The translations under genes and the position numbers were made by a program. A stretch of DNA of 64,000 nt from NCBI GenBank assembly GCA_964304625.1, contig OZ199838.1:1901927-1965926 (forward strand), written 5' to 3'. The DNA comes from Kudoa neothunni. Its lineage: Eukaryota; Animalia; Cnidaria. Positions 14,484 through 48,341 of this stretch are shown one piece after another; positions within the stretch are counted from its first letter, which is position 1; the number at the start of each line of letters is the position of its first letter. The notes beneath the pieces were generated by a model. It had not been told where the DNA came from and searched no databases. It saw nothing but the letters and a program-made list of their open reading frames with translations.

Positions 14484-14567
14484 GTCAGGATGGCCGAGTG
14501 GTCTAAGGCGCTGCGTTCAGGTCGCAGTCTACGCAAGTAGGCGTGGGTTCAAATCCCACTTCTGACA
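14484..14567 (+). tRNA. tRNA-Leu(CAG)
   Basis: GTCAGGATGGCCGAGTGGTCTAAGGCGCTGCGTTCAGGTCGCAG...GGTTCAAATCCCACTTCTGACA: full cloverleaf, long variable arm, TTTT just downstream. Confidence 0.97.
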
Positions 14568-14880
14568 CTCCGCATTTTGTCGCTGTAACTTTTGGGCCTT
14601 TTTTCTTGTCGTGGTGATAGTTAAATTTATTTTATCCTTAACTCTAGGTTTGTTAATCATTGATTATTTTTTTTGTATAACTATGAGGTTATATTTGACG
14701 GTGTCTTTCTCTCCCGAACTAAATTTTGTTAAAATTTTTGGATATTGAATCATGTATGGTAGTCTGACAAAAAATGAAATTAAATATTCACGAGTAAAAT
14801 AATACAAGAATTTAATGCATTCAACAATTTTTTTTAAGAAATTGTTTCTAATGTCACAAGATTTTTATGTTTCTGTATTA

Positions 14881-42726: not shown

Positions 42727-45700
42727 TTAGGGTTTTTTAGAAGGAGTATTCACATTTTTTTGTAAAGCCTTTGAAAGATTGACTTTGGCTCTTCGCTTGT
42801 TATGTTTCCCAGTTTTTAGAATTTTATCTATAATTTCGGAATCTTGCAAAGTGCCAATATTTGTTTTGTTAGGGCTATTTTGGGAATTTTGAGAAAGTTG
42901 TTTGACTGGAGTGGAATCGCCTATTTAGATTTAGCAACCGAGTTAAAATTCTAGATTAGCTGGTGAATAGAATAACTTGAATCCACTAAATTGGTGGAGG
43001 GTTGAGTTTGGTTGGAGATGTTTGCGGTTTCATTTTGGACAATATGTTGAACAATTTCCATATTCAAGTTTTCGTTAGTTCTAGATGAGCTTTTATTTTC
43101 GGAATTGTTATTATTGAGTTGATTGGCGGATGAAGGTTTCTAAAGGAAATAGAATCGTTAAACAAATCACAATTTAAAATAATGTTTACTTTTCTTTTTC
43201 GTCGGCTCATTTCAACTTTCAATTTCTCTTCCCTTTTTCCTAATAACACATTTATATTTGTTGCAGATTCAACTAGTAAGCAACAACACGAATCATCATT
43301 ACTTTGACGTTCCTTTAGGAATTCTTCATTTTCAGATTCCCACATTTTTTGTTTATATTCGCTTTCAGTGGTGGAAAGCAAGCACTAAAATTTTTAGGTA
43401 TTTTTAAAAATTCGAGTAGATTTAATCAGAGATGAAAAGAAATTTATATTTAGTGGGAAATTATAAAATTTGGTCTAAATTAAAAAAATGAGTTAAATAT
43501 CAGCTAATGCGATACATATCATAATATTTAATGCGCAAAAATTATTAAATCAAAAATTAAGGCGAATATAGACAACACTGAATATAACTGTAATCTGCCT
43601 TTATTAAATTTTCAAAATTAATTATACATTTTATTAATGTGTTTAATTATGAAGTTTACTTAATTTTTTATATAATTATTGATTAATAAATGTGTTTTCC
43701 ATTGAAAATCTCCCAAATATTCAAAATAACCTGTATTTTTATTACTTAACAATATCAACCGTAATAGATTTGATCAATAAATTGAACCTTGAAGGGTACC
43801 ATTCATCGAAAATAAAATTTCAAGATGAATTAAGTTGCACAAAAATTGGAAAAAACAATAATAAAGTAACCTTTGAGTTTAATTAATTAATTTATGAAAT
43901 AAATAAATAAATACCAATACAAGTAGTAATTAACCCTCTTAGGAATTTGGGGTGAAATTCACCCCAGCATAATTTTCCATTAATTATTCATCCAACAAAT
44001 GTGTTCATTGTTCAAAATGAATTCTATCTATGCTCATTATATTAAAAATATAAATTAAAATAAAATACACCGTATTTACATTTTTTACTTTTATGCGTTA
44101 CCGAAGAGTTGGTGACTTATGCCGTATAAGGTTTTATGAATAAATTTAGTAAAATTTTTGTTTAAATTTACTTAAAAAAACTCTGGGGTAAATTTCGTCC
44201 CAAAATACTTGATACCTTGATACTTGGAGGTAGTTCGATTTTTGATATCTTAGAGGGTAAATGTATAAAAGTCGTATCGAATATTAATATTTAGCGATGA
44301 TACGATACAAAACTTATTTCCAATGACAAACTCAGGTATGGTTATGAATATGAAATTTTTTCAAGTTTATATATATAGCCAAACCTCAATTATCCAGAAT
44401 TTGATTATCCGGAAGATGTTTTAAACTTTATTTGGATTTTATTGAAATTACGTGTCAATAAATCTTCGATTATCCCAAACAACTGTTGAATCAGAATTCC
44501 AAATAAAAGTACCAACCACCACCGTTCGACATATATAATGTAGCATATATACCAACGCAACATTTAAAACCAACAGATTTCTAGGTTAATTATTTATAAA
44601 TTTTTATATCAGAATTTAAATTAAGAACTGAGTTGTTATTTAAAGTTGTACTATATCTGGATATATGTCTATGTGGATATTAAACAAAAATTAATAACGA
44701 TTATTTAAAAAAGTAGATTATTCCTTGGTAGACATGGTTTTCTCCTATAATTATATACTGTTTTTCCTTTAGGTCTCCATATTCTCAGTTAATAGATATA
44801 TCAACATTTTCAGTTTAAATGACAGAATTGAAAATATTTTACTTAATAAATAGGAAAACATTGCTTATTAATCTAGTAAACAATCCTTTAAGTGGAAAAT
44901 TCAAAAATATGCGCATATGACAATGTATATGTTCATTTATCCAGAATCTGGCTATCCGAAAAGAAAATCGTCTGTCCCAAATTTAAGCACAACATACCTA
45001 CTGCACGTATAATTATCGCGTCTTCCCGATTATAGAACCTACCTCAAAAATAAGACCTAATGTTATTCTTTGAGCTAATTTTTAGTGTAAGACCTAGTCA
45101 AATACTCGAAATCTAGATATTCTGAATTACATAACAAAATATCTCTAATTATCTAATTTTATTTAATAGTTAATAATTATACTCATCGTATTTCTTTCAA
45201 TAGAAATGTTATTTTCTCTATTATTAAATTTTTTATTCTGTTGTATGATCTCAATAATTTATAAAACGCTTTTTCTGTAACAAATATAAGATTGTCACCG
45301 AAAATAATACCTTATGCCATGTATTACATTAAAAATATATAAAAATGTCATATTCGGGGAATAATCTATATGTGAGATTATCTTAATTATTTAATATAAG
45401 TAAATTTGCGCTAATTGAAATTCTCATGTAGAAAAGCATCAGTAAATTATTTTTTTGGTTATTTATTAACATTATGAAAATTTTAAACTTAAAAACTTTG
45501 AATTTAATAAATAAAGAAATACATTTTCGATTTCGAAATCGTCATAATCTGAATTGATTTCTTCAGTGTCAGGAATTTCAGGATATTGTTGCGCGTACTG
45601 AGAAGTATCAATTTTGGAGAGAGACGACACAGTGCGGTCTCCACCAGCCGCTGATTGCTTAATGATCTTTTTGAGTGGGTACAATAGAGTCAATTCATCC

Positions 45701-47240
45701 AAATCTTCATTCTTAGGTGAGTCAGGTTGATCTGCGGAGTTTTGTTCGTCTTTTGAGAATATTATTGAGAATTGTTCATCAATAGATGATAAAATATCGT
45801 CGGAATCTTCGTCGTCGTCATCGCCGACGCTCTCAGCCCCAGCCTTTGATTTCGTATCAGCGTCATTCTGATCATTTTTGGGTGATTCTATGATGGGTTT
45901 TCCTTTTGTTTTTATTGGTTGTTTTTTCAAAATCGTTCCAGTTCGTTGTGTTTCTTCCATACCCACTGTGATTGCTTGACGAATACCCATGAAAATTTCG
46001 ATTTCAGTTTGGGTTTTGCTGACCTGTTGTAGAATACCAGGACCTAACCAGTTGTTTTTTTGTTCAAACTTCTTCAGCCGTTCCGCTTGCTCGACCAATT
46101 GCACGTAGGCAGGTGGATCCGCTTCCACACACTCAGCACTAAGATCCATGTCCTTGAATTCGTCAATAGTGAGCAATGCTGTTTGGGTGTTGCTAAAGTC
46201 TTTGAGGCGTTTTAATAGGATGGATGAACTGATGCGAACAACTCGTACTATTTGTTTGATAGATCGTTTGACACCATGCAAACGGGCAGCTACCAATATT
46301 GCGGCACCACAGAGACCGGCAGGTCTGCGCCCATGGTGAATCCAATCGCGTTTCATTCGTGAAACCAATCTTACTGCGGTGACGCAAATGGCATGAGTTT
46401 GTTCGCCGAGATTCAATTTGTGACCGAATCGTTGAATATACAGGCATGGATCAACAATTGGCAGTTGGATGGATAGTGCTCGAGCGAGAAACAAAAAGGT
46501 TTTCCCCAATGTGAATATATCCAGCTAAAAATTAATTTAATCAAGCGATAAATCAAATCAAAAAATAAGTTCCAATTAAGGTATAAAACAAAATAATTAA
46601 TTGATGCATACTTTAACAACTTCTGTAAAATCCACCAACAAATCTAAACAAAATAAAAAATTAAACAACATCAAAAAACAACGATGAGTAATACGTGAAG
46701 TTTTCTCAATTCGACAACACATGTAAAGACAGGCGACAGCAACATTTTCAATTTTACGCGCTCTAGTCAAATTTCGATGCAACGCCATACGATAGAACGA
46801 AAGCGCCGATTCAACAAATTCCACGGTGAGCGAGGTTTGATTTGCTATATTCAGCATGTAATCCCTCACTAGAACAACCGAGTTAGGTGAAATCGCGGCC
46901 CAAATACACTACCTCGATTAACTGAGGACTCTTGTGAGGGTTTCAAAAGTTGAGCGTTAGGGTCGTCACCTATTTACATATATCATGTATTTACATATCC
47001 GAATATGGTTTAAAAATTAATATAGAATTAAGTGCTATATTTCAAACTGCTTAATATAGATATATTACTTGAACCTACAAATTTCCCTATAGCTCTACTA
47101 GTTGAGCCGGTTTCAACAAATTCAACTTCAGCGACCAAATTCGCCACACTGGAAACAGTACCACAACTTATACAGCAGCTCTCACCAGTTGTGGGGTCGC
47201 TTTCAAATTTTTCACCTCCACATTTAATACAAACAGTCAT
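42727..47240 (-). CDS. BRF1: RNA polymerase III transcription factor IIIB 90 kDa subunit BRF1
   Basis: Zn ribbon CIKCGG...CISCGTV; cyclin repeats (VACLYMCCR, DPCLYIQRF, RMKRDWIHHGRRPAGLCGAAILVAAR, EADPPAY); BRF1 homology block LLSTTESEYKQKMWESENEEFL after a 2138-nt intron (43385-45522). Confidence 0.95.
43930..44261. mobile_element. piggyBac MITE inside the large BRF1 intron
   Basis: TTAA-CCCTCTTAGG...CTTAGAGGG-TAAA; homologous to 4263-4665. Confidence 0.8.
44383..44415. mobile_element. possible Tigger/pogo-like terminal remnant
   Basis: tagccaaacctcaattatccagaatttgattatccgga with repeated TTATCC(G/A)GA; partner TIR not found. Confidence 0.35.
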
Positions 47241-47334
47241 TAATTGATTGATTTGTGGGTGTGTTTTTTCTCTAAGGCCTCGCAATGTATATAAATACTA
47301 TTTGCGCATTGGGCTGCGCGAGCATAAATCATAT

Positions 47335-47440
47335 GCTGGGTGCAGTTAGCGCATCATTCAGCTGCTATTGAAAGTCCCGGGTTCGAATCCGCTTACCTCA
47401 CAACTAAATGAGGAAATACGATGTGTGAGCTTTCTTGTTT
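47335..47440 (+). ncRNA. degenerate tRNA-like Pol III unit (A-box-like motif plus perfect B box) divergent from BRF1
   Basis: GGTTCGAATCC at 47380-47390; D-like stem GTGC/GCGC; anticodon-like stem TTCAG/TTGAA with a 6-nt loop; resembles tRNA-Asn (GTTAGCGC..TTCGGCTGTTAACCGAAAG); no acceptor stem; T-rich end. Confidence 0.6.
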
Positions 47441-47510
47441 GTTATTAGGTAGTATAAAAAAGAGAGAACGTATTATGAATTAAAATAACTAAACAACAAA
47501 GTGGGAATTG

Positions 47511-48341
47511 TTATTTATTAGATAAATTATTCCTGAGGTGTAGCAAACAAATTTTGTCAAAATCGTACAACCACAATGTCACGAGCACATATCCGGAAAG
47601 TACTAAATAGATTATATATAGAGTAGGATAAGTGAGAATCCAAACAAAATACATCCTGTCCATGTTGCTAGCCCCCATGGGAAATAAATTAGACCAAAAA
47701 TAGACATAACTACGCCCACTAAACAAACCGCATTAAATTATCAACTTTAAGGTTTTGTGAGGGAATTTTACCTATCAATAAAAAGATACGAGAAACGTCG
47801 GTGGAAAAATATTTGTTGAATAAAGAAGTCGACTGATTTTTAAGTTGAACACAGAAAATATTCCAACTTCGTCCAACAATTTCGTACGTGAATAATTTCC
47901 TATGTCCGACTCATTGTATGCAACAGTAAATCGATTTACGTTCTCGATGGGGATAGTTTCCATTTGAATCGACCTAAATTATAGTAATAAATCTACTATC
48001 AAAAATTTACTTTCTATATGGTACATTGAAATGAATTTTTTAGCAAATTTGAAAAGAACAAGAGGGAATGCTATTCCAAGGACTAACCTGAACGCGAAAC
48101 AACCATACCAAACCAATGATAAACTAACAAAGTGGACGATTAAACATAACCTCGCACGTCTATGTTACATCCAATTCACTAAGAGGATCGAAAAAATAAA
48201 CAACGAATAGTTGCTTTTCCATGCAAATATATCCACAATGAGATTCCAATTTTTTTCTAACAACTTATCCACATTTACTTTATCTTGAGTTTCGTTATTG
48301 GTAGGGGGTGCTTCAGTGTTTTTTACCTGAGGACCACTCAT
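47511..48341 (-). CDS. reticulon-homology-domain membrane protein (FAM134/RETREG or ARL6IP1-like), paralog A
   Basis: DIFAWKSNYSLFIFSILLVNW first hairpin; GLIYFPWGLATWTGLLSGYVLVTLWLYDFD second hairpin (spliced parse); similar to 50827-51858. Confidence 0.55.

What the first reader, a model, noticed from the sequence alone, without database searches (positions are those of the whole stretch)
47240..47440. tRNA-like Pol III promoter inside the BRF1 promoter: candidate TFIIIB autoregulatory loop
Seen: a perfect B box GGTTCGAATCC (47380-47390) lies 140 bp upstream of the BRF1 ATG (47240, minus strand) in a decayed tRNA-Asn-like scaffold that points away from BRF1. The scaffold has an A-box-like TGGGTGCAGTTAG and D-like and anticodon-like stems, but no acceptor stem and a broken T stem. 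Between it and BRF1 lie TATATAAATA (47288-47297) and a GCGCA promoter-type motif (47303-47320). Known: TFIIIC binds B boxes and places TFIIIB (TBP-BRF1-BDP1) about 10-45 bp upstream of the Pol III start; yeast TFC6 is autoregulated through the ETC6 B box in its promoter. Inference: TFIIIB would assemble at about 47285-47325, over BRF1's own Pol II core promoter, so BRF1 protein could shut off its own gene. An intact B box in a lost cloverleaf fits selection on the DNA element rather than on a tRNA. It could alternatively block read-through from the gene ending at 47511.
Basis: partly seen in the sequence, partly recalled or inferred. Interest (0 to 1): 0.82.

Follow-up and report, generated by a model that had tools for sequence, protein, structure and literature searches.

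The report
Conserved lone B box upstream of BRF1
A short DNA motif that normally sits inside tRNA genes and recruits the RNA polymerase III factor TFIIIC stands alone about 140 bases upstream of BRF1, itself a polymerase III factor gene, and is kept at the same place and orientation in two distant relatives, so it is probably a working regulatory site, although nothing has yet been measured.

Summary
The B box GGTTCGAATCC at 47380-47390 (+) is real. It lies 140 nt upstream of the ATG of a minus-strand BRF1 gene. These are GGTTCAAATCT at 146 nt and GGTTCGATACT at 126 nt, both pointing away from BRF1 as in the window. That motif (GGTTCRANNC) occurs about once per 80 kb outside tRNA genes, and it is the only GC-containing block the three spacers share.

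The unit is not a copy of the two tRNA-headed SINE families that account for 85 of 100 perfect B boxes examined in this genome. The "decayed tRNA-Asn scaffold" is not supported. There is no tRNA or Rfam hit, the A box is not above chance, the 5' flank is no more tRNA-like than shuffles, and no fold beats shuffles. One relative has a T7 run inside the unit.

The best reading is an extra-TFIIIC-like lone B box kept by selection at the BRF1 promoter, analogous to yeast ETC6 at TFC6. Factor binding, the direction of any effect and BRF1 self-repression are all untested, because no RNA reads mapped.

The parts
47380..47390 (+). Perfect B box GGTTCGAATCC, oriented away from BRF1. This is the conserved element.
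   Evidence: Sequence read. 0 of 5000 shuffles reach its matrix score. B-box cores stand at the matching place in L062 (1796-1786) and L064 (362-352).
47337..47349 (+). Present, but not above chance.
   Evidence: A-box matrix score 2.9; 552 of 5000 shuffles do as well, and 37% of other anchor positions do as well.
47288..47297 (.). TATATAAATA, the only strong TATA element between the BRF1 ATG and the B box. It lies 48-57 nt upstream of the ATG and 83-92 nt from the B box.
   Evidence: Its role as a Pol II TATA, a TFIIIB site or both is inference.
47303..47320 (.). TGCGCA / GCGC motif cluster. A TGCGCR motif also lies between the ATG and the B box in both relatives. Probably a Pol II promoter motif.
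   Evidence: shuffles with as many TGCGCR copies were 4 of 2000 (window), 6 of 2000 (L062) and 66 of 2000 (L064).
47241..47510 (.). 270-nt spacer between the stop codon of the upstream same-strand gene and the BRF1 ATG.
47028..47240 (-). BRF1 exon 1 (zinc ribbon). Open-frame limits; the 3' splice point was not mapped.
   Evidence: Pfam PF08271. 67% and 63% identical to the first exons in L062 and L064.
46597..46869 (-). BRF1 exon 2 region (first TFIIB cyclin repeat). Open-frame limits.
   Evidence: Pfam PF00382.
45472..46509 (-). BRF1 exon 3 region (second cyclin repeat and acidic linker). Open-frame limits.
   Evidence: Pfam PF00382, E 1e-21. Best named hits are BRF1 / TFIIIB 90 kDa.
47511..47726 (-). 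Last exon of the upstream membrane-like gene, with its stop at 47511-47513. The same gene sits upstream of BRF1 in L062.
   Evidence: Collinear tblastx exon matches between the window and L062. No Pfam family.

Best explanation
The element is a lone B box: an 'extra TFIIIC' (ETC)-type site with no functional tRNA gene around it. Selection has kept it about 125-146 nt upstream of the BRF1 start codon, pointing away from BRF1, in at least three related species.

Shown: the motif, its rarity, its conservation in place and orientation where the rest of the spacer is scrambled, and the absence of a tRNA, a SINE or a conserved RNA.

Inferred: TFIIIC binds it through its B-box-binding module. A factor bound there lies within about 100 bp of the TATA and TGCGCA elements of the BRF1 Pol II promoter and just past the 3' end of the upstream same-strand gene. 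From that position it could set BRF1 transcription by competing with the Pol II machinery, as TFIIIC does at ETC6 in the yeast TFC6 promoter. It could also shield the promoter from read-through. Either way, the supply of the TFIIIB subunit BRF1 would be coupled to the amount of free TFIIIC. Whether TFIIIB is recruited as well, which would be true self-regulation by BRF1, is open.
For: - The B box is exact.
- The 11-mer occurs 115 times in the genome against 3 for the control.
- GGTTCRANNC occurs twice in the 64-kb window, once in the 8.9-kb L062, once in the 1.7-kb L064 and once in 83 kb of tRNA-locus flanks. In both relatives the single hit is the site upstream of BRF1, on the strand opposite to BRF1.
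- Shuffles reaching the observed matrix score: 0 of 5000, 0 of 5000 and 66 of 5000.
- All universally fixed T-loop bases (G53, T54, T55, C56, A58, C61) are kept in all three species.
- The species are far apart. BRF1 exon identities are 58-67%, and fourfold sites in exon 1 are 25-53% identical, at or near chance for this composition on only 16-21 sites per pair.
- The three spacers share no other exact word of 6 or more bases that is not A/T-only.
- It is not a SINE copy, not a tRNA or any Rfam family, and has no fold signal.
- L064 has a T7 run between the A-like region and the B box, which would stop Pol III, so a full-length RNA is not conserved.
- TFIIIC subunits (Tau95, zf-TFIIIC) are encoded in the genome.
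- Precedent: the ETC6 B box in the TFC6 promoter, bound by TFIIIC at -150 to -90, lowers TBP occupancy and transcript level about twofold (PMC3334521).
Against: - There are no occupancy, expression or transcription-start data. Three RNA runs labelled with this species gave zero reads.
- Only three species are available, and their relationships are unknown.
- The L064 motif is weak on its own (8 of 11 bases, p about 0.013).
- About 10 of 100 perfect B boxes in this genome are orphans, against about 3 expected by chance. An orphan in this SINE-rich genome is therefore not remarkable on its own; the case rests on the relatives.
- The motif also lies 63-120 nt past the upstream gene's stop codon, so it could belong to that gene.
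- The TFIIIC B-block domain (PF04182) was not found by six-frame search. This is not conclusive, because the domain may be split by introns.
- Nematostella BRF1 has no B box in its upstream spacer, and the distant L066 shows none by eye, so the feature is lineage-restricted.
Confidence: 0.5

Rival explanations
1. TFIIIC at the B box places TFIIIB (TBP-BRF1-BDP1) on the TATA at 47288-47297, over BRF1's own core promoter, so that BRF1 protein represses its own gene.
For: The geometry fits. The TATA lies 83-92 nt from the B box, as on a tRNA gene, and 48-57 nt from the ATG. TATA-like runs stand at the matching distance in both relatives by eye. The B box is conserved.
Against: The A box is not significant in any of the three species, and yeast ETC sites bind TFIIIC without TFIIIB. 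TATA-like runs are common in this A/T-rich DNA: L064 has no canonical TATA there, and the L062 count is not above shuffles. No data exist on occupancy.
Confidence: 0.15
2. Roadblock or insulator. TFIIIC bound at the B box stops Pol II read-through from the upstream same-strand gene into the BRF1 promoter. There is no feedback on Pol III factor levels.
For: The genes are tandem and only 220-270 nt apart. The B box lies 63 nt (L062) to 120 nt (window) past the upstream stop codon. The gene pair is syntenic in two species. Known for yeast tRNA genes and ETC sites (recalled from the literature; PMC4228148 was listed but not read).
Against: B-box cores are not a general feature of tandem spacers here: about 1 per 80 kb, and only this one in a 64-kb window with many genes. 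It is unclear why this pair alone would need one. In L064 the 350 nt upstream show no trace of the same neighbour gene, although the contig is too short to decide.
Confidence: 0.2
3. Neutral relic. A decayed tRNA gene or old SINE head in the window species, with chance look-alikes in the two relatives.
For: The genome is full of tRNA-headed SINEs, and about 10% of perfect B boxes are orphans. The flanks (GGGTTCGAATCCGC) equal the family A consensus over 14 nt.
Against: Using the 7-nt core alone (1 per 4.3 kb on both strands), the chance of a same-strand hit within +/-15 nt of the window's distance is about 0.004 per relative, or about 1e-5 for both. With C61 required it is lower still. Neutral sites between these species are at or near saturation.
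Confidence: 0.08
4. The conserved word serves something other than TFIIIC. It could be a site for another DNA-binding protein, or an element of the upstream gene's 3' end read on the other strand (GGATTCGAACC and variants).
For: Only about 10 nt are conserved. The position is just past the upstream gene's stop codon.
Against: All six universally conserved T-loop or B-box positions are retained in all three species, and the window copy is a perfect 11-mer. No other known motif was identified.
Confidence: 0.1
5. A small Pol III-transcribed RNA gene (tRNA-like) that merely neighbours BRF1.
For: T5 and T6 runs lie 12 and 9 nt after the B box in L062 and L064, where a tRNA-sized gene would end.
Against: There is no T4 run for about 160 nt after the window's B box, and there is a T7 run inside the L064 unit. 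There is no Rfam hit, fold signal or shared sequence apart from the B box. T runs are common in this A/T-rich DNA.
Confidence: 0.05

Closest known systems
ETC6 in the TFC6 promoter of Saccharomyces cerevisiae (Kleinschmidt et al. 2011, as summarised in PMC3334521)
   Same: A lone B box with no tRNA gene, about 100-150 nt upstream of a gene for a Pol III initiation factor, conserved among related species. There TFIIIC binding lowers TBP occupancy and transcript level.
   Different: The target gene here is BRF1, a TFIIIB subunit, not a TFIIIC subunit, so TFIIIC binding would be cross-regulation rather than self-regulation. The lineage is an animal one. Nothing here has been measured.
Extra-TFIIIC (ETC) sites and fission-yeast COC sites; human ETC sites near Pol II promoters
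   Same: B-box-only sites in spacers next to Pol II promoters, without a working A box or an RNA product.
   Different: These are defined by measured TFIIIC occupancy without Pol III, which is unknown here. The extended flanking consensus of yeast ETC sites was not compared.
tRNA-relic Pol III loci of yeast (ZOD1, iYGR033c), recalled from the literature
   Same: A possible origin as a decayed tRNA gene whose promoter element outlived the tRNA.
   Different: Those loci retain A and B boxes and bind the whole Pol III machinery. Here no A box or tRNA remnant is detectable beyond the B box.
tRNA-derived SINE heads bound by TFIIIC near Pol II genes (e.g. PMC3744447)
   Same: The same B-box sequence as the heads of this genome's two SINE families.
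   Different: It is single-copy, has no SINE body, and sits at an orthologous position in relatives, so it is not a recent insertion.

Membership tests
ETC-type (extra TFIIIC) site | Match to the B-box consensus GGTTCGANTCC | tested here: met
   11 of 11 in the window, 9 of 11 in L062 and 8 of 11 in L064, with G53, T54, T55, C56, A58 and C61 kept in all three.
ETC-type (extra TFIIIC) site | No functional tRNA gene or A box around it | tested here: met
   No ARAGORN or Rfam hit. The A-box matrix is not above chance. No fold signal.
ETC-type (extra TFIIIC) site | TFIIIC occupancy without TFIIIB or Pol III | not testable with these tools
   Needs ChIP or CUT&Tag. Only TFIIIC subunit genes were shown to exist in the genome.
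ETC-type (extra TFIIIC) site | Conservation of the site among related species | tested here: met
   Same strand, 140, 146 and 126 nt from the BRF1 ATG in three species whose silent sites are at or near saturation in the one exon tested.
TFC6-type self-regulation of a Pol III factor gene | The gene product is part of the factor that binds the promoter site, and binding changes expression | not testable with these tools
   BRF1 is not a TFIIIC subunit. It would reach the site only if TFIIIB is recruited. No expression data.
tRNA gene or tRNA pseudogene | Cloverleaf or detectable similarity to tRNA beyond the T loop | tested here: not met
   The Rfam tRNA model gives nothing at E<=10. The 5' 55 nt are no better than shuffles against this genome's tRNAs. 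There is no acceptor stem, and 3 of 5 T-stem pairs are broken.
tRNA-derived SINE copy (families A and B of this genome) | Similarity to the family consensus beyond the B box; multiple copies | tested here: not met
   blastn finds only the unit itself. nhmmer with the family A profile matches 15 nt at E 0.6, and family B gives nothing at the site.
BRF1 (TFIIIB 90 kDa subunit) for the downstream gene | Zinc ribbon plus two TFIIB cyclin repeats, with best matches to BRF1 proteins | tested here: met
   The C-terminal BRF1 homology block (PF07741) was not found by six-frame search; it is probably split by an intron after ...DYDDFEIENVF.

The most novel reading that the evidence does not exclude
The conserved B box, together with the TATA 83-92 nt away, forms a switch. 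TFIIIC would direct TBP-BRF1 onto the same TATA that the Pol II machinery needs to transcribe BRF1, giving direct negative self-regulation of TFIIIB. This would be the first such circuit for BRF1 and the first in an animal lineage.
Probability: 0.15. Interest if true: 0.8.

Novelty: new member of a known kind. Interest (0 to 1): 0.55.

Why it matters
How cells balance the amounts of the Pol III initiation factors is poorly understood. The only worked example known to me is TFIIIC repressing TFC6 through ETC6 in budding yeast. A lone B box held in place upstream of BRF1 across deeply diverged species suggests that the same logic, a Pol III promoter element wired into the Pol II promoter of a Pol III factor gene, arose or persists in an animal lineage and links TFIIIC to TFIIIB supply. 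It is a compact, testable case: one 11-nt site in a 270-nt spacer. The weak points are that the organisms are not laboratory models and that all evidence so far is comparative.

Tried and rejected
- **RNA evidence.** Three metatranscriptome runs labelled with this species gave 0 reads on 46800-47800. The one DNA run only reproduces the sequence and may be its source. So there is no test of the BRF1 start site, of the upstream gene's 3' end or of a Pol III transcript.
- **More relatives.**
  - Word searches with exon 1 alone and with a three-species alignment found only the two Logan contigs.
  - A JGI metagenome scan found none.
  - P0110's contigs had no retrievable DNA, and L065 lacks the 5' end.
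  - L066 is a distant organism (40% identity in exon 1) and shows no B box by eye in the 387 nt upstream.
  - P0005 is not on record.
  - The Henneguya contig L140 has no recognisable first exon, so its promoter cannot be placed.
  - Nematostella (L069) has no B box in the upstream spacer. Its two intronic perfect B boxes are near-identical copies of one repeat.
- The word search had already been widened with an alignment.
- **tRNA ancestry (Asn, Val, Gly)** was considered and dropped as not above chance.
- **A 'Pol III regulon'.** There is no GGTTCRANNC within about 1.5 kb of the domain hits for Maf1, Bdp1-type Myb or zf-TFIIIC. The only one near Tau95 lies on its 3' side.
- **TFIIIC B-block (PF04182) and BRF1 block (PF07741)** were not found by six-frame search. 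This is uninformative because introns split exons.

Full report
**1. What is there**

The window is A/T-rich (about 30% GC) and belongs to a 40.26-Mb assembly of four contigs.

- On the minus strand, open frames at 47028-47240, 46597-46869 and 45472-46509 carry a TFIIB-type zinc ribbon and two TFIIB cyclin repeats.
- The largest frame's best named matches are BRF1 / TFIIIB 90 kDa of cnidarians, a myxozoan and vertebrates, at about 50% identity. The gene is therefore BRF1 of an animal with no close relative among named proteins.
- I searched the exons one by one by reference and built no joined model.
- The ATG is at 47240-47238.
- The B box GGTTCGAATCC is at 47380-47390 on the plus strand, 140 nt upstream and pointing away from BRF1.
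- TATATAAATA (47288-47297) and the TGCGCA/GCGC cluster (47303-47320) lie between them.
- The next gene upstream, on the same strand as BRF1, ends with a stop at 47511-47513.

**2. Is the B box more than chance, and is it a tRNA or a SINE?**

The 11-mer occurs 115 times in the genome against 3 for the reversed control. I classified 100 of these sites:

| Class | Sites |
|---|---|
| Head of long tRNA-derived SINE family A | 58 |
| Second SINE family B | 27 |
| tRNA genes | 5 |
| Orphans, including this one | 10 |

An orphan perfect B box is therefore not extraordinary in this genome.

The BRF1 unit is not a family member. blastn of 47320-47420 against the genome finds only itself. The family profiles match it only over the B box (15 nt, E 0.6).

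It is not a tRNA either. ARAGORN finds only tRNA-Leu(CAG) at 14484-14568 in the window. Rfam finds nothing at the site, even at E<=10 on 500 nt.

- The A-box-like word scores no better than 11% of shuffles.
- The 55 nt 5' of the B box align to this genome's tRNA 5' parts no better than 70% of shuffles.
- The fold has z = +0.76.
- Three of five T-stem pairs and the whole acceptor stem are missing.

**3. The decisive test: relatives**

Word searches with the BRF1 exons found two related loci on Logan contigs from other sequencing runs:
- L062 (8.9 kb): 58% identity in exon 3 and 67% in exon 1.
- L064 (1.7 kb): 63% identity in exon 1.

Fourfold-degenerate sites of exon 1 are 25-53% identical between the species, on 16-21 sites per pair. 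That is at or near what the A/T-biased composition alone gives, so silent sites look saturated. The three spacers share no exact word of 6 or more bases other than A/T-only words.

Both relatives nevertheless have a B-box core upstream of BRF1, on the strand opposite to BRF1:

| Locus | Motif | Distance from ATG |
|---|---|---|
| Window | GGTTCGAATCC | 140 nt |
| L062 | GGTTCAAATCT | 146 nt |
| L064 | GGTTCGATACT | 126 nt |

 All the universally fixed T-loop positions (G53, T54, T55, C56, A58, C61) are kept.

Rarity:
- GGTTCRANNC occurs twice in the 64-kb window (this site and the real tRNA-Leu), once in L062, once in L064 and once in 83 kb of other flanks.
- The 7-nt core alone occurs once per 4.3 kb.
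- Against a matrix built from this genome's own tRNA B boxes, 0 of 5000, 0 of 5000 and 66 of 5000 shuffles of the respective spacers reach the observed score.
- Even with the 7-nt core alone, a same-strand hit within +/-15 nt of the window's distance has a chance of about 0.004 per relative, or about 1e-5 for both. This is my arithmetic.

**4. What is and is not conserved around it**

- The A box is not significant in any species.
- The distance from the A-like word to the B box varies (about 39-50 nt).
- L064 has a T7 run between them that would terminate Pol III.
- The window has no T4 run for about 160 nt after the B box, whereas L062 and L064 have T5 and T6 runs 12 and 9 nt after it.
- No fold beats shuffles, and Rfam gives nothing credible.

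An RNA product is therefore not conserved; a DNA word is.

A second, weaker shared feature is a TGCGCR word between the ATG and the B box in all three species, with shuffle counts of 4 of 2000, 6 of 2000 and 66 of 2000. It is probably a Pol II promoter motif.

The upstream membrane-like gene is collinear between the window and L062. The B box lies 120 nt (window) and 63 nt (L062) past its stop codon. L064 is too short to show its neighbour.

**5. Mechanism**

The B box alone suffices for TFIIIC binding, and in yeast the ETC6 B box in the TFC6 promoter is bound by TFIIIC over -150 to -90. That binding lowers TBP occupancy and halves the transcript level (PMC3334521). The genome encodes TFIIIC subunits (Tau95 and zf-TFIIIC).

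The most economical reading is an ETC-type TFIIIC site kept by selection at the BRF1 promoter. TFIIIC bound there would stand within about 100 bp of the TATA and TGCGCA elements. It could compete with Pol II pre-initiation complex assembly, stop read-through from the upstream tandem gene, or do both.

But it lacks an A box and any data. I rate it at 0.15, the roadblock-only reading at 0.2, and the general 'functional TFIIIC site acting on BRF1' at 0.5. The two narrower readings are special cases that overlap the general one, so these confidences are not meant to sum to 1.

B-box cores are not a general feature of spacers here (about 1 per 80 kb). None was found near the Maf1, Bdp1-type Myb or zf-TFIIIC loci. 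The site is therefore locus-specific, not part of an obvious regulon.

Nematostella BRF1 has no B box in its upstream spacer, and none is visible by eye in the 387 nt upstream of the distant L066 gene. The Henneguya contig could not be interpreted. The feature is lineage-restricted.

**6. What could not be done**

- No RNA reads mapped, so the BRF1 start site, the upstream gene's 3' end and any Pol III transcript are unknown.
- The organism's name is coded.
- No further relatives were found.
- A search of the paper library found the ETC6/TFC6 precedent but nothing on a B box at a BRF1 promoter.

**7. Verdict**

There is evidence for selection on a DNA element at the BRF1 promoter. Self-repression through TFIIIB is untested and less likely than a TFIIIC-only site.
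- It is a new member of a known kind (an ETC-type site at the promoter of a Pol III factor gene). Interest is moderate to good, because it is compact and testable.

Noticed in passing
G000 loci L002-L031 and L070-L139 (for example L031 and L029 for family A; L018 and L022 for family B): Two abundant tRNA-headed SINE families carry the exact B box. Family A has a body of at least 400 nt and accounts for 58 of 100 perfect B boxes. Family B accounts for 27 of 100. Only 5 of 100 perfect B boxes lie in tRNA genes.
   Followed up: partly
L084 and L110; L017, L098, L125: Among the orphan perfect B boxes, L084 and L110 are two copies of one further repeat. L017, L098 and L125 have an intact T-stem around the B box and may be other tRNA relics or minor SINE heads.
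   Followed up: no
window 47303-47320; L062 about 1811-1816; L064 about 415-420: A TGCGCR word (palindromic TGCGCA in two species) lies between the BRF1 ATG and the B box in all three species. It is rarer than expected by shuffles and may be a conserved Pol II promoter motif.
   Followed up: partly
window 47511 to about 50997 (-); L062 579-1723 (+): The gene upstream of BRF1 is a multi-exon, membrane-like protein with no Pfam family. It is collinear in the window and L062, so the gene pair is syntenic.
   Followed up: partly
window 14484-14568 (+): An intact tRNA-Leu(CAG), the only tRNA gene in the window (Rfam 56 bits).
   Followed up: yes
L067 (G000:C2:5872026-5875355): The Tau95 (TFIIIC subunit) locus holds four GGTTCGA cores in 3.3 kb, against about one per 4.3 kb in the window. 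One is GGTTCGATTCG, about 1.4 kb to the 3' side of the domain match. Unexplained.
   Followed up: no
L069 3592-3602 and 6429-6439 (-): Introns of Nematostella BRF1 hold two near-identical copies of a repeat with a perfect B box. The upstream spacer has none.
   Followed up: partly
G000 as a whole: Three contigs of 17.15, 12.04 and 11.05 Mb leave about 18.2 kb for the fourth contig by subtraction. That suggests three chromosomes plus an organelle-sized piece.
   Followed up: no
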